Position numbers and translations under genes: made by a program
Part shown: positions 911-54,852 of the stretch, one piece after another
Numbering within the stretch: the first letter of the stretch is position 1
How the letters are laid out: every line of letters begins with the position of its first letter
IMG/VR virus record: IMGVR_UViG_3300046003_007892
Coordinates: 1-64,000 of that record
DNA length: 64,000 nt
Reading direction: 5' to 3' (one strand)
The notes under the pieces: model-generated
Databases searched by the model: none
The model's input: only the letters and a program-made list of their open reading frames with translations
Told to the model about the DNA's origin: nothing

Positions 911-3900
911 TTACTGCCACTTCCTGATCTTGAGGTTCGAAGCCGTATTGGAGTTGATGATCACGACGTCATTGACCTGGGCGGTCGAGAGGAAGATTTC
1001 ATCCGAACGACAGCGGACCTCGAAACCATCACCGAAGCTCGACGACGATTTGCGGGGAACGACGACAACCGAGCCGATCACGCCAGCGAGTTGCTGGTGG
1101 ATGTAGGCTGCGAGTTCCGTGTAGTAGAAAGTCTCACCGAAGTCCCACATCTGAACGTTGAAGTAATCATTTACGGCGCGGATGACGCGGGACTTGATTT
1201 CACCATCTGAAAGGGTGGTGTTTTCAAGCTTCACGACCTTGAACTGTGCGCTGAGGTCTTCTTCGGCTCCGAAGAGAAACTTGTATTGAACAGGGCGCCA
1301 AACAATCTCGTCGGAGAACATTTTGTAGTTGTTGAACTCGCTGAGCGCAATACGGAGATCGAGTTCGCTCGGGGGGAGAGGGAGATCAGCCTTTTTCGCG
1401 CCATTGGCCACCCACTGGCGCGTGACGTAGTCGTATTCCGACGTCAGGACAAATATGTCGATGATGTTGGTCTTGGACGGGTCGATGCGATGATCAGACG
1501 GGGCGTAATGCTTCCACTGGAAATTGATCGGGTATTGAGCAGGCGTCTTGGATTCGTCGGCCGTATACCAATCGATTGCTACGTTCGGTCCTCTGCCCAG
1601 TGCGAAACGATAAGCCTTGGACGTCATCAGGCCATCCACCGGGGACCAGCCCGAAGTTGTCATCTCGAAGAAGTTATTGGCCGTGCCGTCTGCTATCGAG
1701 GTCGAGTCTGGAAGCTGGAACGCGACGGTCCCAATAGGCGGCGTGGCGGCCAGCCGACGTGTGCTCGTTTCGTACACCGTCATGGTATAGTAGGGCAGGA
1801 ATCGGCCCTCGGCGTTTCGAGCCCAGAATAGGTATTTGGACTCCGGCGATACGGCATTAGAGTCAGCAACAACGCGGGCGAAAGTGTCGGGTTGGTCCGG
1901 CACGCCGTCCTCATCAGAGTCGATGAACGCTACTCCGACACGGAGGGGTTCAGCATAGCCGTCCGTGTAATGGATGAGGTTGGTGATCGAGAGATCGAAC
2001 GGGCGGTCGAGACTACGTCCCGTGCCGAGGTTGATGTCCTCGTTGACGGACATGACGCGCACTAGGTCTTGCTTCTGCAATCCGGTGTTGCCGTCTACGG
2101 CCTTGGCACCGTCGAAATACCATTGAACATTCCCCTGGCTCTCGAAGATATAGCGGAGACCAGCGGTGGTGATGCGCCACAGGTCACTGCTCACGTAATC
2201 GACGGTCATGATCTTGATTGTCGTTGACGTGATGGCCTCGTCTGTGGTGAGGGCGGGCGGGCCAATCATCCACGTTCCGGTTGCGAACTCGTACAGGATG
2301 GTGAAGGACGTGTTGTCCAGCAGCTTCTGCTCGATGTCAGCCAACGCCGAACTGGTCAAAGTTGAGTTGAAGCGCGGTATGATGCGCTCGACGCCCACTG
2401 TGGCCGGGACCGGCTTGGAGAAAGTCACGCCCTTACGGCCAGCACTCGGCTGAACTGTGATGTCACCATCGTCGATATCGACAATGCTCAACCACTCGCG
2501 GCCATCAGGCTTCAGGGCGACCAGTGCGCCGGGCTTCAGGGTCGGGCGAATAGCATGCGAGGAACCCACGTTGGCGAACCAACCCGTGCCGGAGATCGAA
2601 GAAGAGGTGGTGGGTCGGATTTCCATATCGGATGGAACTTCCGGGATGGCGGTCGTGGGGCGCATCATGGCCTCAATGGCGTAGTTTGAAGTCGATTGGC
2701 GGCGCAGCGCGGGCTGGATGTAGATCGCGACCATTTCGGCAGGCGTGCGGCTAAGCGACAGAGGAACCTCAACCGAGTAATCGTCGAACTCCTTGTAGAA
2801 CATTCCGTCGTCAGAGAATACGTTGGTGTCCTGGTAGTTGCCCGTGGGGTCGTTGAGGTCGATGAAGCGCGAATGGCCGGAGTAGATGCGATTCACCGCC
2901 TTCATCTTGACTGCCAGATTGGATTGCAGGGGGAAGGTGTTGTAGTCCTCACCCGAGACCATGCGGTTCTGGGTCGCGTAAACAGTCGGTGCGCGACGAC
3001 GGATTTGCTCGTCGGTCTCGCGCGGCGTCGAGTTCGTCACTGTTTCCTGGAGGGAGAAAGTTACCAGAAGGGTGCGCGGAATGCCACGGCGGTTCACATA
3101 AGGAACCGGGATGGTGACGCGGTCGATGTCCTGCGGCCGAATAGTGTAGCGTTGGCCATTCGAGACCCGATACCAGACGCGGATGTTGCCCACCGGGGCG
3201 GCACCGAAACGACCATCGGAGAAGCGGATGCTGATGCGGTCGTCATCTCGGGTCACGACCGAGAAAATGTTGCGGACAGTCGGCGGGAGGCTGTTGAAGG
3301 TCGTGTTTTCGCTAACGATGGCGGGGACCTTGGACCATTCGGTCGTGATCGCACCAGCGTCCGAGACGGTCTGAACCCAGACGTCGCTCTGGTTGATGTT
3401 GGAGACGTCGATGTCGATGAGTTTGTTCTCGACCGGAACCGGGACGTTGATGGTTTGGCGGCTCATCCGTCCCTGCTTGAAGTGAGCGAAGAAACCAGAA
3501 TTGGGAGACGCGTTTCCGGCGCCGTCCGTGCGGTGGAAGAGGTGGAAGGCAGCGTCGGGGTTGGGAGTCCGCTCAAAGAAACCTTGTGTCTCGTCGAAAT
3601 CACCGTTGCAGATTTCAAAATCCATGCGGTCGCCACCAGCCTGTGCGGTGAAGCCAGCGTTGATCTGCGAAGTCTTGCCGTTGATGCGATAGAGTTGAGT
3701 TCGGGCTCCGCCGATGGTAGCCGCCTTCAGGGGCTGACCGAACTGATTGTTCTGAACGAACGCGTTGTTCATGATCAGGGTGAAGCGTTCGTACCAATCC
3801 GGGTCGTCGCTGTTGTTCCACTGAACGGCGGTGTTGGACAGATTGACCCCGTAACCGTCAATGACGTCGTCGTCCGTCTGAATTTCGACGATCTTGAGCA

Positions 3901-6525: not shown

Positions 6526-7233
6526 ATGTCCACTCGTTCCTATATCGGAAAAGTCGAAAACGACGGCAGTGTGCGCTACATTTACTGCCACAGTGACGGC
6601 TACATGTCGCACAATGGTGTCTTGCTGTTCTTCTTCTACAGTGACCCGAAGAAATTGGATAAACTCCTCCACGAGGGAGATGTAAGCAGTCTCGGAGCGG
6701 AGATCGGCAAGAAACACGGATGGGACCAACACTCCTGGAATGAAGACAGCGGGATTCCCGTAACGTGGTCGAAGTTCTACGCTCGTGAACGCGGCGACGC
6801 CATGAGGAGATGGTCTCACCCGAGCGAGCAGGAGTTTTGGGCCAAAAGTGACGAAATCCCTTACCTGTTCAAGGACGGGGAATGGTACAGCGAGGATTCT
6901 GGTTGGCCCAAGACGCCCGAAAACACGGTCAAGTTCTCACTCCGAGACCATCTCGGCAAATGCATGGTCAAATGCAGCTATGACGGGGGAACTATCGGAC
7001 TGTCCGATATTGCCTTCTATGAGATCACCGACCCGGAAGACTACGAGGAGGGCGAGAAATCCGAATACGAGGTCGCCGTCGAAGAGGCCCCTCACGGCTC
7101 GATCTTCCTCAAAGACATATTCGATTTCTGCGAGAAAGAACGGGTCAAGCCCAGGTGGTCAGGAAACTACAACGACATCCACATGACGCTTTCCAAGAAA
7201 GCCATGACGAAGTTCGTCCTTCTGCACTGCTAG
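6526..7233 (+). CDS. Conserved phage hypothetical protein
   Basis: MSTRS...IYCHSDGY N-terminus common in phage hypotheticals. Confidence 0.7.
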   Translation: MSTRSYIGKVENDGSVRYIYCHSDGYMSHNGVLLFFFYSDPKKLDKLLHEGDVSSLGAEIGKKHGWDQHSWNEDSGIPVTWSKFYARERGDAMRRWSHPSEQEFWAKSDEIPYLFKDGEWYSEDSGWPKTPENTVKFSLRDHLGKCMVKCSYDGGTIGLSDIAFYEITDPEDYEEGEKSEYEVAVEEAPHGSIFLKDIFDFCEKERVKPRWSGNYNDIHMTLSKKAMTKFVLLHC

Positions 7234-26819: not shown

Positions 26820-26843
26820 CCAGGGGTGGTCCTGAGCACTTTG

Positions 26844-26916
26844 CTGGGGAGATAGGTCTCGAACCTATAACCGCCCGATTCAGAGTCGGGTGCTCCACCA
26901 GTTAAGCTACTCCCCA
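26844..26916 (-). tRNA. tRNA-Gln(CTG), no encoded CCA
   Basis: loop CTCTGAA, U1-A72; 17-bp flanking inverted repeat. Confidence 0.9.
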
Positions 26917-27089: not shown

Positions 27090-27116
27090 GTCGTAGATGA
27101 AGAACAATGTCCTTTG

Positions 27117-27190
27117 CTGGGATGGAGGGATTCGAACCCCCGACCCTCGGTTTCGTAGACCGATGCTCTAATCCGCTGAGCTACACCCCA
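27117..27190 (-). tRNA. tRNA-Arg(ACG), no encoded CCA
   Basis: loop CTACGAA; 12-bp flanking inverted repeat. Confidence 0.9.
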
Positions 27191-40667: not shown

Positions 40668-40740
40668 GAAAAATACCTCCGAGCCGAAGTGGCCCAAAGG
40701 TATTTATCTTCGTGTAATCAAACCTATGACGGTTCGAGAA

Positions 40741-40829
40741 TGGCTCCTAGTTGAGGAATCGAACCTCACTCGTTAGCCTCGCGGCCTACAGGGTAACAAC
40801 CTGCCCGCACACCTTGTGCGTTACTAGGA
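40741..40829 (-). tRNA. tRNA-Asn(GTT) with atypical long variable arm
   Basis: loop TTGTTAC, U1-A72, GGCC-GCGA-GGCT variable hairpin, CCA encoded. Confidence 0.75.
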
Positions 40830-40861
40830 ATAGCGATGCCCCGAAAGGCATCAGAGATAAG

Positions 40862-41173
40862 CTGGGCAGGCAGGGCTCGAACCTGCGACATTTCGATTCG
40901 CTTGTTCCCATGTTCCCATGGGCGCGGACTATATCTTCACCCTCAGCATTACCTGTTAGGGGCTGGGTGCTGTTTGGTCGTTATCGGGTTTGGCTCCCTC
41001 AGACCTAGTCTCTACACCTTCCGAAATACTCAAGGCCTTCTTTCGGCTCGGCTCGGGATTGCCACCGCCATTACGCGAGAGGTTTCCCCGAATTCTCCCA
41101 GATTTTCAACCTCAGTTTCCCGAGGAAGTGTCCATTGAACAGTCGAACGCTCTACCAACTGAGCTACAACCCA
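40862..41173 (-). tRNA. tRNA-Asn(GTT) split by group I intron (exons 41138-41173, 40862-40898), no CCA
   Basis: Exons join to a canonical 73-nt cloverleaf with loop CT-GTT-AA. Confidence 0.9.
40899..41137 (-). mobile_element. Group I intron, 239 nt, no ORF
   Basis: P GAATTCGGGGAAAC, Q AATCCCGAGC, R GTAGAGACTA, S AAGATATAGTCC; P1 with U.G at 5' splice site; terminal G. Confidence 0.92.
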
Positions 41174-41326
41174 GCTTATCTCTGACTTGGCGTCCCCCCT
41201 CCCGCCATCACCTGTTGGTGTCTGCGCGGTCGGAGGAACATGGTTGCCCCCGACCATGAGAAACCTTGCTCTCATGGTCGGGAGGGTTTTCTTGCCCTCC
41301 CCCGTAAAGGGGGTCCGGCACGAAGA

Positions 41327-41557
41327 TTAAACGTCGGTCGCCTTCCTGTGATTCTTGAAATCGCGTCCGCGTTCCTGAATGACGGTTGCGTCGAGTTCGG
41401 TTCCGAAGGCCTCAAGGACCGTCCAACCTCGGCTCCACTTGCCGTCTTCCTTGAGATCAACGAGGCCGTCCTGGATGGCCCGTTCAGACGGAATCCAGGA
41501 GACTTGACGTGCGCCGTTGCGCTCCAGTGTGCATTGTTTTACAGTCTCCCTTCTCAT
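41327..41557 (-). CDS. Small hypothetical protein within tRNA array
   Basis: AAGGA SD, 76 aa. Confidence 0.55.
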   Translation of the reverse strand: MRRETVKQCTLERNGARQVSWIPSERAIQDGLVDLKEDGKWSRGWTVLEAFGTELDATVIQERGRDFKNHRKATDV

Positions 41558-48915: not shown

Positions 48916-50280
48916 ATGATCAACTTCGATTTCGCCAAGCGGGCCTACGATCACAGCTTCAAGATCGACCCCATCATCCGGTTCCTGTCGGACACGGATT
49001 TCTACAAGCTGTTGATGCACCAGTTCATCTACCGGAACTTCTACAACACGACGGTGTCCTTCCAGGTCTTCAACCGGTCGGACTCCGTGCTGCTCGCGAC
49101 CGAGATCGACGAGGCCGAACTCCGCGCCCAACTCGACCACGTTCGCACCCTGAAATGGGAGCAAAACGAACTCAACTACCTGAAGGCCCAGGAGTTCTAC
49201 GGCAAGCGGGACCTGTTCTGCAACGCCTACCTGGACTACCTCCAACACAGCTTCAAGCTCAGCGACTACGATCTGGAGATGACCGCCAACGGTCAAATTC
49301 TGCTGACCTTCAAGGGCACGTGGGTCGAGGTCACCCTGTGGGAAATCTACGCGCTGGCGATCATCAACGAGATGCGCTACCGCCGCAAGATGGCCCTGAT
49401 GACCAAGATGGGTCTCGACGTCATGTATTCGCAGGCCAAGACCAAGGCCTACCGGAAGGCCAAGAAGCTCGCCCGTCTGGCCAACCTGAAGATCACCGAC
49501 TTCGGCACCCGTCGCCGTCACAGCCATCTCTGGCAGGAATACATCATCCTCCTCTACCGGGACATCCTCGGCGACCGCTTCATCGGCACGTCGAACGTCT
49601 ACTTCGCCATGAAGCACGGCCTGAACGCCATCGGGACCAACGCGCACGAGATGCCGATGGCCTACGCCGCCATGGCCGCCGCCCACGGTGGTTCGGACGA
49701 AGAAATCCGGGAGGCTCAATACAAGTTCCTCCGGGATTGGGCGGCCGATTATCGCGGCGGTCTTCAGGTCTTCCTTCCCGACACCTTCGGCACCACCCAG
49801 TTCCTCAAGGGCGCCCCGCTCTGGCTGAAGGAATGGCGCGGTGGTCGCCCGGATTCCAAGAAACCCATTCCGGGCGGCGAGGAACTGATCGCCTACTGGA
49901 AGGAACACGACGAGGCCATCGAAGAGAAGCTGATCGTTTTCGCTGACGGCCTCGACGTCCGCATCGACGGCTTCGAGCCCAACGGCGAAGACATCACGGC
50001 CATCTATGAACACTTCGAGCCCACGGGCGTCGGCCACACCTACGGTCTGGGCACGATGGGGACCTGTGACTTCCTCGGCTGTCACCCCGACGATACCGAC
50101 GACGTCCAGATCATGAAGCCGATCTCGCTCGTCTGCAAACTCAGCGAAGTTGAAGATGTCCCGGCTGTCAAGCTGTCGGACAACTACAAGAAAGCGACGA
50201 GCGCGAGCCCCGAAGAGGTCGCCCGCTATCGTGCGATCTTTGGTCACGAGGGGATGGAGAACATCCCCGTCCAGGTCTAG
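48916..50280 (+). CDS. pncB: Nicotinate phosphoribosyltransferase
   Basis: DTDFYKLLMHQ, DFGTRRRHS, GTNAHE, PDTFGT, RPDS, AVKLSDN..KATS. Confidence 0.93.
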   Translation: MINFDFAKRAYDHSFKIDPIIRFLSDTDFYKLLMHQFIYRNFYNTTVSFQVFNRSDSVLLATEIDEAELRAQLDHVRTLKWEQNELNYLKAQEFYGKRDLFCNAYLDYLQHSFKLSDYDLEMTANGQILLTFKGTWVEVTLWEIYALAIINEMRYRRKMALMTKMGLDVMYSQAKTKAYRKAKKLARLANLKITDFGTRRRHSHLWQEYIILLYRDILGDRFIGTSNVYFAMKHGLNAIGTNAHEMPMAYAAMAAAHGGSDEEIREAQYKFLRDWAADYRGGLQVFLPDTFGTTQFLKGAPLWLKEWRGGRPDSKKPIPGGEELIAYWKEHDEAIEEKLIVFADGLDVRIDGFEPNGEDITAIYEHFEPTGVGHTYGLGTMGTCDFLGCHPDDTDDVQIMKPISLVCKLSEVEDVPAVKLSDNYKKATSASPEEVARYRAIFGHEGMENIPVQV

Positions 50281-53802: not shown

Positions 53803-54852
53803 ATGTTCGTTAAGCCCAAGATCGGTTTCCTGCTCGGCAAGTTCTTGCCGCCCCACAACGGGCACAAGTTCCTGTGCGAGTTCGCCCGCCAGTATTGTGA
53901 CCATCTCGTCATCCTCGTCGCCACCCTTCCGAGCGAGCCCATTCCTGGCCGCCTCCGCTACGAGTGGATGAAGGAGATGTTCCCCGACTGCACGGTCGTG
54001 TGGACCAACGAAGTCCTCCCGCAGGAACCGAAGAACGACCGCGATGGTCAGTTTTGGGAAACGTGGAAGCAGGAAATCGCCAAGGCCATGCGGGCGCACG
54101 CCCGCACGTTCAACGACGGCATGGGCATCGGCGGCTTGCCGTGGAAATGGCCCGACGTCGTGTTCGCCTCCGAAGACTACGGCCACAAGCTCGCGGCATC
54201 GGTCGGTGCCCGGTTCGTCCCCTGCGACATCGTCCGTCAGGCTGTCCCGATCTCGGGCACGCGTGTGCGGGCCAACCCGGAACTGGAATGGGAGTTCCTC
54301 CCGGACGTCGTCCGCCCCTACTTCGTCAAGCGCGCGGTGGTGTTCGGGCCGGAGAGCACGGGCAAGTCAACCCTGGCCGCAGAACTCGCCGCGCACTTCA
54401 AGACTACCCTGGTTCCCGAATACGGCCGGACCTACACCGAGGCGTTCGGCTCCGACGTTGGACCCGAAGACCTCAAGAACATCGTAGCCGGACACGTCGC
54501 CAGTGTGGCGGCTGCCAAGCGGCAGTGCAAAACCCGCGTCCTGATTGAAGACACCGACCCCGTCATGACCGCCGTGTGGTCCGACATGCTGGTCGGCGAA
54601 CGGGACCCGTGGTTCTCCGAGTATCGCGACCACGCCGACATCTATCTGTTGTGTGACGTCGATATCCCGTGGGTCAATGACGGCACTCGCTATTTCGAGA
54701 ACGATGAAGATCGCCGAAGATTTTTCGCCATCTGTGAAAAAGAACTTCAAGATCGTCGCGTTCCCTATGTTGTCATTCGGGGCGATAGAAAAGAACGACT
54801 GCGTCTTGCCATCGACGCCGTGCAGGGGTTATATGGTGCACCGATAATCTGA
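53803..54852 (+). CDS. nadR: NadR-type NMN adenylyltransferase / ribosylnicotinamide kinase (no HTH)
   Basis: GKFLPPHNGH; GPESTGKSTLA; VPEYGR; DTD; DIPWVNDG.R. Confidence 0.92.
   Translation: MFVKPKIGFLLGKFLPPHNGHKFLCEFARQYCDHLVILVATLPSEPIPGRLRYEWMKEMFPDCTVVWTNEVLPQEPKNDRDGQFWETWKQEIAKAMRAHARTFNDGMGIGGLPWKWPDVVFASEDYGHKLAASVGARFVPCDIVRQAVPISGTRVRANPELEWEFLPDVVRPYFVKRAVVFGPESTGKSTLAAELAAHFKTTLVPEYGRTYTEAFGSDVGPEDLKNIVAGHVASVAAAKRQCKTRVLIEDTDPVMTAVWSDMLVGERDPWFSEYRDHADIYLLCDVDIPWVNDGTRYFENDEDRRRFFAICEKELQDRRVPYVVIRGDRKERLRLAIDAVQGLYGAPII

What the first reader, a model, noticed from the sequence alone, without database searches (positions are those of the whole stretch)
40862..41173. Group I intron in the anticodon loop of a phage tRNA-Asn(GUU)
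Seen: exon 1 (positions 1-36, ending ...CTGTT) and exon 2 (AATCGAA...CCCAG) join into a canonical tRNA-Asn. The 239-nt insert has P/Q/R/S core motifs, P7 (GAGACTA/TAGTCC), a P1 in which exon UGUU pairs with intron GACA giving the U.G splice-site pair, and a terminal G. Known: tRNA group I introns are established in cyanobacterial/plastid Leu(UAA) and fMet, Azoarcus Ile and Agrobacterium Arg(CCU) tRNAs, while phage group I introns usually sit in protein genes. Inference: a self-splicing tRNA intron in a phage is rare. It could also keep the anticodon loop unformed until splicing.
Basis: partly seen in the sequence, partly recalled or inferred. Interest (0 to 1): 0.85.

Follow-up and report, generated by a model that had tools for sequence, protein, structure and literature searches.

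The report
Self-splicing intron in phage tRNA-Asn
A jumbo phage carries an asparagine tRNA gene split in its anticodon loop by a 239-base group I (self-splicing type) intron; this is a known kind of element in a host (phage tRNA genes) where it has hardly been reported, although related unannotated examples turn out to exist in other jumbo phages.

Summary
On the minus strand, 41173-41138 (36 nt) and 40898-40862 (37 nt) join into a canonical tRNA-Asn(GUU). The 239 nt between them (41137-40899) match Rfam Intron_gpI at the family threshold (50.1 bits against 50, E 9e-10).

All expected helices form with standard pairs: P1 to P9, P9.0 and an extra hairpin after P7. The 5' splice site is a U.G pair (exon UGUU / guide GACA) and the intron ends in G. 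Intron-less phage tRNA-Asn genes align straight across the junction.

The window is the first 64 kb of a 240-kb jumbo-phage contig related to Agrobacterium phage Atu_ph07 and Klebsiella Rak2-like phages. A second metagenome holds the same intron.

- Bacterial tRNA group I introns now number 21 classes, including Asn interrupted one base earlier.
- I found unannotated tRNA group I introns in cultured Klebsiella and E. coli jumbo phages.
- Several large viral contigs carry one in tRNA-Asn.

Most likely this is a selfish, self-splicing intron with no homing endonuclease. Splicing itself is untested. It is a new member of a known kind, of moderate interest.

The parts
41138..41173 (-). tRNA-Asn(GUU) exon 1 (nt 1-36: acceptor UGGGUUG, D arm, 5' anticodon stem UUCGA, loop CUGUU)
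   Evidence: ARAGORN on joined exons; contiguous alignment with intron-less viral tRNA-Asn genes
40899..41137 (-). Group I intron, 239 nt, no ORF
   Evidence: Rfam RF00028 50.1 bits, E 9e-10; all helices form standard pairs; family covariation
40862..40898 (-). tRNA-Asn(GUU) exon 2 (nt 37-73: AA, 3' anticodon stem UCGAA, variable loop, T arm, acceptor CUGCCCA, discriminator G73; CCA not encoded)
41129..41141 (-). P1: exon U33-G34-U35-U36 (41141-41138) pairs with guide GACA (41132-41129); U36.G is the splice-site wobble pair; loop CAAUG
   Evidence: the guide covaries with the exon across relatives (UGUU/GACA, CUGU/GCAG, UCAU/GUGA, GGACU/GGUCC, CUCU/GGAG)
41110..41125 (-). P2 hairpin CCUCGG-GAAA-CUGAGG (GNRA tetraloop)
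   Evidence: also present in the free-energy fold
41097..41101 (-). P3 5' strand CUGGG (partner CCCAG at 40963-40967)
41052..41092 (-). P4-P5 domain: P4 UUCGGG/CCCGAG (41087-41092 / 41052-41057), J4/5 GAAA, P5 41062-41082, J5/4 CAA (the classical P and Q motifs)
   Evidence: invariant columns of alignment A1
41017..41051 (-). P6 with apical GAAGG...GAGUA motif shared with relatives
41006..41012 (-). P7 5' strand G-(A)-GACUA (R motif; holds the guanosine-binding G-C pair and a bulged A)
40976..41005 (-). Extra hairpin between P7 and P3' (P7.1-like): GGUC...GACC with inner GGG-AGCCAAA-CCC and GAUAA
   Evidence: Motif GAGG(A)GCC..CC.AUAA shared with L006 and the Burkholderiales tRNA(CAU) introns, and with the Asn.4Ug and Lys.2Ug seeds of Williams 2020, whose Phe.2Ug and Leu.1Ug seeds carry the hairpin with a looser motif
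40963..40967 (-). P3 3' strand CCCAG
40938..40962 (-). P8 (with AA bulge and one bulged U, where relatives have an A-U pair)
40926..40931 (-). P7 3' strand UAGUCC, preceded by J8/7 AAGAUA (S motif)
40900..40925 (-). P9.0 (GC 40925-40924 with GC 40901-40900) enclosing P9 hairpin 40907-40922 (CCCAUG-GGAA-CAUGGG)
   Evidence: P9.0 covaries in relatives (GC/GC, AGG/CCU, UUU/AAA, AAG/CUU)
40899..40899 (-). Terminal G (omega G), last intron nucleotide
41174..41185 (-). 5' leader UCAGAGAUAAGC, complementary to the 3' trailer; extends the acceptor stem
40851..40861 (-). 3' trailer CUUAUCUCUGA, pairs with the leader (13 continuous pairs counting C-1:G73)
40671..40705 (-). Terminator-like hairpin, probable end of the transcription unit (after the neighbouring 89-nt tRNA at 40741-40829)
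   Evidence: a consensus scan only

Best explanation
This is a genuine group I intron of the bacterial tRNA type, sitting between U36 and A37 of a jumbo-phage tRNA-Asn(GUU) gene. Proposed mechanism (inferred, not shown): the minus-strand tRNA cluster is transcribed. The exons pair in the anticodon stem (UUCGA/UCGAA) and in a 13-bp leader-trailer helix. The guide sequence GACA pairs with exon UGUU to form P1. Free guanosine bound in P7 attacks after U36. P9.0 then places the terminal G (40899) in the same site, and the exons are ligated to give the loop CUGUUAA. RNase P, 3' trimming and CCA addition complete the tRNA. The intron has no ORF and no homing endonuclease gene nearby, so it is most likely a selfish or neutral passenger. 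It probably reached this site by retargeting of its guide sequence (reverse splicing or recombination) from a related intron in another tRNA.
For: Shown:
- Rfam group I match at threshold, E 9e-10.
- The joined exons form tRNA-Asn(gtt).
- Intron-less homologues align contiguously across the junction.
- All 11 helices form standard pairs in this sequence.
- In a 12-sequence alignment with phage and bacterial relatives, RNAalifold recovers P3, P4, P5, P6, the P7.1-like hairpin, P8 and P9; 26 of 42 predicted pairs show double compensatory changes.
- The guide sequence and P9.0 covary with the exon and with the 3' end in each lineage.
- Only one splice-site choice satisfies both U at -1 and G at omega, and it is the one that gives GUU.
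- The window keeps every invariant column of the 12-sequence alignment A1. In a separate 16-sequence alignment it differs at 5 of 70 columns conserved at 85% or more, inside the family range of 1-18.
- An independent metagenome contig carries the same intron.
- No homing endonuclease domain is present in neighbouring ORFs.

Inferred: the catalytic steps, by analogy with the Azoarcus and Anabaena pre-tRNA introns, and the role of anticodon-stem pairing (Zaug et al. 1993, as cited in PMC3984707).
Against: Splicing was not observed; no transcript data were available. The Rfam score (50.1) sits on the threshold and is far below that of relatives (80-108 bits). P8 has lost one base, leaving a bulged U. 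P1 is only 4 bp and I found no P10. The free-energy fold is not better than shuffles (z = -0.69), although that test is insensitive for pseudoknotted ribozymes. The nearest relative found is only 68% identical over 199 aligned columns, so no lineage-specific covariation could be measured.
Confidence: 0.85

Rival explanations
1. The intron is a decaying relic that no longer splices, so the gene is a tRNA pseudogene and the phage relies on the host tRNA-Asn or on the neighbouring 89-nt tRNA(GUU).
For: The Rfam score sits at threshold, against 80-108 bits in relatives. One base is deleted in P8. A second GUU tRNA lies 32 nt downstream. The orthologous tRNA-Asn of Agrobacterium phage Atu_ph07 carries a 46-nt insert too short to be a ribozyme, which may be a dead insertion.
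Against: All helices, the U.G pair, the terminal G, P9.0, both GNRA loops and all invariant core positions are intact. The deviations fall inside the family range. The exons show no decay: 92% identity to intact tRNA-Asn genes and a single U-U mismatch in the acceptor stem.
Confidence: 0.1
2. The intron is a regulatory device: splicing, and so the supply of phage tRNA-Asn, depends on a phage or host factor or on guanosine nucleotide level. This would time Asn decoding or act together with the long-arm tRNA(GUU).
For: Only circumstantial. tRNA-Asn(GUU) is repeatedly the interrupted gene in large phages. A long-arm tRNA(GUU) sits beside an intron-containing tRNA in both this phage and Klebsiella phage Muenster.
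Against: No evidence of any factor. The same intron family sits in other tRNAs (CAU, Phe, Lys, Leu) and in protein genes of phages, as expected of a mobile element rather than a dedicated regulator.
Confidence: 0.04
3. Chance resemblance, mis-assembly, or a protein-coding region.
For: Mechanical ORFs overlap the region (40836-41138 +, 41030-41275 -).
Against: E 9e-10 for the ribozyme model; exact exon junction against intron-less genes; an identical intron in an independent contig.
Confidence: 0.01

Closest known systems
Azoarcus pre-tRNA-Ile(CAU) group I intron and the 'Ile2.5Ug' class (subgroup IC3)
   Same: Same insertion point (after nucleotide 36), and the 3' exon also starts AAUC. It has a short P1 with a U.G pair, a P2 with a GAAA loop, the same P4/P6/P7 core sequences (AAUUCGG.GAAACC, GGCAA..CCGAGCC, GAAGGUGUAGAGACUAG), P9.0 plus a terminal G, and no ORF.
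   Different: The guide is GACA instead of GUG(A), matching GUU instead of CAU. The window intron has an extra hairpin between P7 and P3' that the Azoarcus sequence lacks, interrupts a different tRNA, and has a phage rather than a bacterial host.
Bacterial 'Asn.4Ug' tRNA introns (Williams 2020, bioRxiv 10.1101/2020.01.27.920355; seed Pam37.Asn.4Ug)
   Same: Same tRNA isotype, and the same extra hairpin with the GAGGAGCC..CC.AUAA motif. I also found this class in the genome collection (L022, labelled Pacearchaeota; L051, Omnitrophota; L123) and in large viral contigs (L006, L175, L177).
   Different: Those introns lie one base earlier (after U35; guide GCAG pairing with CUGU). The window's lies after U36 (guide GACA). 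The nearest one, L006, is 68% identical over 199 aligned columns.
Phage group I introns in protein genes (T4 td, nrdB, sunY and relatives)
   Same: Self-splicing group I ribozymes carried by phages. Relatives of the window's core sequence also sit in phage protein genes (L004-L020; Vibrio phage terminase).
   Different: Those interrupt coding sequences and often carry homing endonuclease genes. A 2014 review states that all phage introns known then were in protein genes despite the many phage tRNA genes (PMC3984707).
Lak megaphage tRNA introns (Devoto et al., bioRxiv 10.1101/356790)
   Same: Introns reported in tRNA genes of very large phages.
   Different: They are described as 'enigmatic' and placed with eukaryote-type tRNAscan rules; the passages I read do not call them group I. 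The one Lak-A1 match I examined is a sub-threshold group I core (46 bits) that is not in a tRNA.

Membership tests
Group I intron (Rfam RF00028) | Covariance-model score at or above the curated gathering score | tested here: met
   50.1 bits against 50; E 9.2e-10 over the 64-kb window. Borderline in bits.
Group I intron (Rfam RF00028) | Conserved core: P3-P8 with the P3/P7 pseudoknot, and the P, Q, R and S sequence motifs | tested here: met
   All helices form standard pairs. All invariant columns of alignment A1 are kept. 26 of 42 consensus pairs show compensatory change across relatives.
Group I intron (Rfam RF00028) | 5' splice site after a U that forms a U.G wobble pair in P1 with an internal guide sequence | tested here: met
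   U36.G with exon UGUU / guide GACA. The guide covaries with the exon in five tRNA contexts.
Group I intron (Rfam RF00028) | Terminal G before the 3' splice site, positioned by P9.0 | tested here: met
   G at 40899; P9.0 GC/GC lies directly upstream and covaries in relatives.
Group I intron (Rfam RF00028) | Guanosine-dependent self-splicing | not testable with these tools
   Needs in vitro transcription with GTP and Mg2+, or RNA from infected cells.
Bacterial tRNA anticodon-loop group I introns (the 'IC3' tRNA introns; Williams' gpI_bact_tRNA set) | Lies in the anticodon loop, and removal restores a 7-nt loop and a canonical tRNA | tested here: met
   The loop becomes CUGUUAA and ARAGORN calls tRNA-Asn. 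It is the only U(-1)/G(omega) solution among the eight possible positions. Intron-less homologues exist.
Bacterial tRNA anticodon-loop group I introns (the 'IC3' tRNA introns; Williams' gpI_bact_tRNA set) | Exons held by the anticodon stem in place of a P10 helix | tested here: inconclusive
   A 5-bp anticodon stem UUCGA/UCGAA is available and I found no P10 pairing by eye on the sequence. Its role in splicing is inferred from Anabaena work cited in PMC3984707.
Bacterial tRNA anticodon-loop group I introns (the 'IC3' tRNA introns; Williams' gpI_bact_tRNA set) | Strict subgroup IC3 architecture | tested here: inconclusive
   The core sequences match IC3 tRNA introns such as Azoarcus. However, an extra hairpin lies between P7 and P3', as in the Asn.4Ug, Lys.2Ug, Phe.2Ug and Leu.1Ug seeds. 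No subgroup classifier was available.
tRNA-Asn | Anticodon GUU, discriminator G73 and a U1-A72 first pair in a class I cloverleaf | tested here: met
   ARAGORN structure. 57-67 of 73 positions are identical to 17 intact viral tRNA-Asn genes. Charging by AsnRS is not testable here.

The most novel reading that the evidence does not exclude
Group I introns may have colonised the tRNA genes of jumbo phages and megaphages repeatedly, with tRNA-Asn(GUU) and tRNA(CAU) as hot spots. They would move between anticodon loops by retargeting the 4-nt guide sequence: CAU after nt 36, GUU after nt 35, GUU after nt 36. In this reading they are retained because they matter in the phage-host contest over tRNAs, for example by gating or protecting the phage's own tRNA-Asn supply, in concert with the long-variable-arm tRNA(GUU) genes found beside them. 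The Asn-after-U36 site appears to have been colonised at least twice by unrelated intron lineages.
Probability: 0.12. Interest if true: 0.7.

Novelty: new member of a known kind. Interest (0 to 1): 0.45.

Why it matters
Reviews of bacterial group I introns note as a puzzle that phage introns sit only in protein genes, although phages carry many tRNA genes (PMC3984707). This locus shows that the gap is one of annotation rather than biology. So do the unannotated relatives I found in cultured Klebsiella (Muenster, KP13-7, RCIP0023, phiKp_21) and E. coli (Turkey5, TH47) jumbo phages and in contigs of 59 to 543 kb.

There are three practical consequences:
- Phage tRNA counts and codon-supply analyses miss intron-split genes, and intron-aware tRNA finders mis-name them.
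- The cultured phages offer a ready system for testing tRNA-intron splicing during infection.
- The series CAU/GUGA, GU|U/GCAG and GUU|/GACA is a clean natural example of guide-sequence retargeting.

Tried and rejected
- Near-identity search of 4 kb around the locus against 50,697 phage records found only tRNA-Trp matches, so there is no close cultured relative.
- The free-energy fold gave z = -0.69, which is uninformative for a pseudoknotted, GC-rich ribozyme.
- ARAGORN with introns allowed places the intron by eukaryote-like rules and gives Arg(GCG) here and Tyr(GTA) for L006. I rejected both because they violate the rule of U at -1 and G at omega.
- In the metagenome pattern scan, 4 of 6 hits (L160-L163) are chance matches without the intron's 3' core; only L158 and L159 are real.
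- I suspected that L006 (543 kb) was a Lak megaphage and that the Lak 'tRNA-Tyr intron' was this element. L006 has no near match in the phage collection, and the Lak-A1 match is sub-threshold and not in a tRNA. The link is therefore unsupported.
- I looked for a homing endonuclease in neighbouring ORFs and found none.
- The 89-nt neighbour tRNA has no match in the phage collection by blastn.
I used my own pair counts in Python rather than typing a long structure string.
- The table of Williams 2020 is an image, so I could not check whether an 'Asn.5Ug' class is already listed there. The seed alignment holds only Asn.4Ug.

Full report
**What is there**

Read on the minus strand, 41173-40862 is TGGGTTGTAGCTCAGTTGGTAGAGCGTTCGACTGTT | 239 nt | AATCGAAATGTCGCAGGTTCGAGCCCTGCCTGCCCAG. 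ARAGORN finds no tRNA in the precursor. On the joined exons it finds a canonical tRNA-Asn(gtt): a 7-bp acceptor stem with one U-U mismatch, the anticodon stem UUCGA/UCGAA, the loop CUGUUAA, discriminator G73 and no encoded CCA.

Rfam's group I intron model matches 40906-41155 on the minus strand at 50.1 bits (gathering score 50). The E-value is 9.2e-10 for the whole window and 1.2e-11 locally. It is the only group I match in the 64 kb.

**The splice junction**

Among the eight possible positions in the loop, only one has a U before the 5' site and a G before the 3' site. That choice gives GUU.

Seventeen IMG/VR contigs hold an uninterrupted tRNA-Asn whose 27-nt anticodon arm equals the joined exons. 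Overall they match 57-67 of 73 positions. L143 aligns 6957-6992 to window 41173-41138 and 6993-7038 to 40898-40853, so it is contiguous there but 239 nt apart in the window. Agrobacterium phage Atu_ph07 has a tRNA-Asn 92% identical to both exons.

**Anatomy of the intron**

I assigned these helices, and each pair is a standard pair:
- P1: exon UGUU with guide GACA, including the U36.G pair.
- P2: CCUCGG-GAAA-CUGAGG.
- P3: CUGGG/CCCAG.
- P4: UUCGGG/CCCGAG.
- P5 and P6.
- P7: G-(A)-GACUA with UAGUCC.
- An extra hairpin between P7 and P3'.
- P8.
- P9.0: GC/GC directly before the terminal G.
- P9: closed by a GGAA loop.

In a 12-sequence alignment with phage and bacterial relatives, the window keeps all 56 invariant columns. 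RNAalifold independently recovers P3, P4, P5, P6, the extra hairpin, P8 and P9, and 26 of 42 predicted pairs show changes on both sides.

The guide sequence tracks the exon in every lineage: UGUU/GACA, CUGU/GCAG, UCAU/GUGA, GGACU/GGUCC and CUCU/GGAG. P9.0 varies in a compensatory way: GC/GC, AGG/CCU, UUU/AAA and AAG/CUU.

In a separate 16-sequence alignment, the window differs at 5 of 70 columns conserved at 85% or more. Other members differ at 1-18 of theirs, and none of the five positions lies in P7 or J8/7.

Weak points:
- The Rfam score is at threshold, while relatives score 80-108 bits.
- One base is deleted in P8, leaving a bulged U.
- P1 has only 4 bp, and I found no P10.
- The free-energy z-score is uninformative.

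**Which phage**

The window equals positions 1-64000 of IMGVR_UViG_3300046003_007892 (240,363 bp). L014 is 100% identical at the same coordinates. A 79-kb contig from another metagenome (L009) is 99.94% identical over 9.25 kb and carries the same intron.

The window encodes a baseplate wedge protein (PHROG 10646, E=0) and NAD-salvage enzymes. The wedge protein is 43% identical to that of Sinorhizobium phage Phosso, 40% to Agrobacterium phage Atu_ph07, and about 36% to Serratia, Erwinia, Klebsiella and Vibrio jumbo phages. It is therefore a Rak2-like jumbo phage, probably of an alphaproteobacterium; that host assignment is inferred.

Seventeen tRNA genes, all on the minus strand, lie in two clusters.

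**Relatives of the intron**

A core-motif scan of IMG/VR gave 17 loci. Most have the intron in protein genes. L006, a 543-kb contig, has it in tRNA-Asn(GUU) after U35.

Further scans found:
- Asn-after-U35 introns in L175 (469-kb contig, 92.8 bits) and L177 (58.7-kb contig, 90.1 bits).
- tRNA(CAU) introns in L165 and L170.

Cultured phages carry them too:
- Klebsiella phage Muenster and its relatives have a 104-bit intron in tRNA(CAU), with no feature annotated there.
- E. coli phage Turkey5 has a 95-bit intron, followed by an HNH endonuclease gene.

In bacterial genomes the same core occurs in Leu(UAA), CAU, Arg, fMet, Phe, Lys and Asn(after U35) tRNAs. The metagenome scan found two more Asn-after-U36 introns, L158 and L159.

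In a maximum-likelihood tree the window's intron sits in a clade (support 82/87) with the Asn-after-U35, CAU and Phe introns. Its nearest neighbour is L006, at 68% identity over 199 columns. L158 and L159 fall in the other clade, so this site was probably colonised more than once (most inner branches are weakly supported).

**Literature**

- Hausner et al. 2014 state that all phage group I introns known then were in protein genes, despite the many phage tRNA genes (PMC3984707).
- Williams 2020 raised the number of bacterial tRNA-intron classes from 4 to 21. The seed alignment includes Pam37.Asn.4Ug, which has the same extra hairpin.
- Devoto et al. reported 'enigmatic' tRNA introns in Lak megaphages. 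I could not tie those to this family.
- Four further full-text searches found no report of a group I intron in a phage tRNA gene.

**Mechanism and verdict**

The most likely account is an ordinary guanosine-initiated two-step self-splicing reaction that yields tRNA-Asn(GUU). The intron has no ORF, and neighbouring ORFs have no endonuclease domain. It is most likely a selfish passenger that reached this site through a change of guide sequence.

The structure and the junction are shown here; catalysis is inferred. I rate this a new member of a known kind. The host (a phage tRNA) and the exact site (Asn, after U36) are unusual and barely documented.

Noticed in passing
window 40741-40829 (minus); also L001 1854-1937 and L158 about 3420-3700: An 89-nt tRNA with the Asn anticodon GUU but a long variable arm (class II shape). 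It has a 5-bp D stem, U1-A72, G73 and an encoded CCA, and lies 32 nt downstream of the intron-split tRNA-Asn. ARAGORN calls it Asn; Rfam gives only a weak tRNA-Sec match (25.5 bits). A similar 84-nt long-arm 'tRNA-Asn' follows the intron-split tRNA(CAU) in Klebsiella phage Muenster. In metagenome contig L158, a long-arm tRNA(GUU) is itself split after U36 by a group I intron. Which amino acid these tRNAs carry is unknown.
   Followed up: partly
window 26843-26916, 27116-27190 and 40862-41173, with about 20 nt of flank each: The three tRNA genes that lack an encoded CCA are Gln-CUG, one Arg-ACG and the split Asn. All have the acceptor UGGG.../...CCCA plus G73, and all are flanked by inverted repeats that continue the acceptor stem for 17, 12 and 13 bp. 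The 14 CCA-encoding tRNAs have no such flanks, and neither do 17 related intron-less viral tRNA-Asn genes. This may be an RNase III-type processing stem or a cassette boundary.
   Followed up: partly
L003 999-1117 (Agrobacterium phage Atu_ph07, MF403008 about 323.9 kb): An unannotated tRNA-Asn(GUU), 92% identical to the window's exons, carries a 46-nt insert after U35 that is far too short to be a ribozyme. The insert looks like a tRNA minihelix: stem AGAGGC/GCCUCU plus a T-arm-like UUCAG-UUCGAUU-CUGAA.
   Followed up: partly
L001 1457-1765 (Klebsiella phage Muenster), L002 (phiKp_21), L164 753-1060 (E. coli phage Turkey5): Cultured jumbo phages carry unannotated group I introns (Rfam 104 and 95 bits) after nucleotide 36 of a tRNA(CAU) gene. 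An HNH endonuclease gene lies nearby downstream in Muenster (after the intervening long-arm tRNA) and in Turkey5.
   Followed up: yes
window 41249-41300: Two adjacent strong hairpins (GACCATGAGA...TCTCATGGTC and GGGAGGG...CCCTCCC) lie between a small minus-strand ORF (41327-41557) and the split tRNA. They score as terminator-like on the plus strand only.
   Followed up: no
window 48916-50277 and 53803-54849: The phage carries NAD-salvage genes: a nicotinamide phosphoribosyltransferase-like gene and a nicotinamide-nucleotide adenylyltransferase gene (PHROG E 1e-65).
   Followed up: no
L022 (JAGVXA010000008.1, labelled Candidatus Pacearchaeota): A tRNA-Asn(GUU) with a group I intron after U35 sits in a MAG labelled as archaeal. 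Williams 2020 suspected that similar cases are bacterial scaffolds binned wrongly.
   Followed up: no
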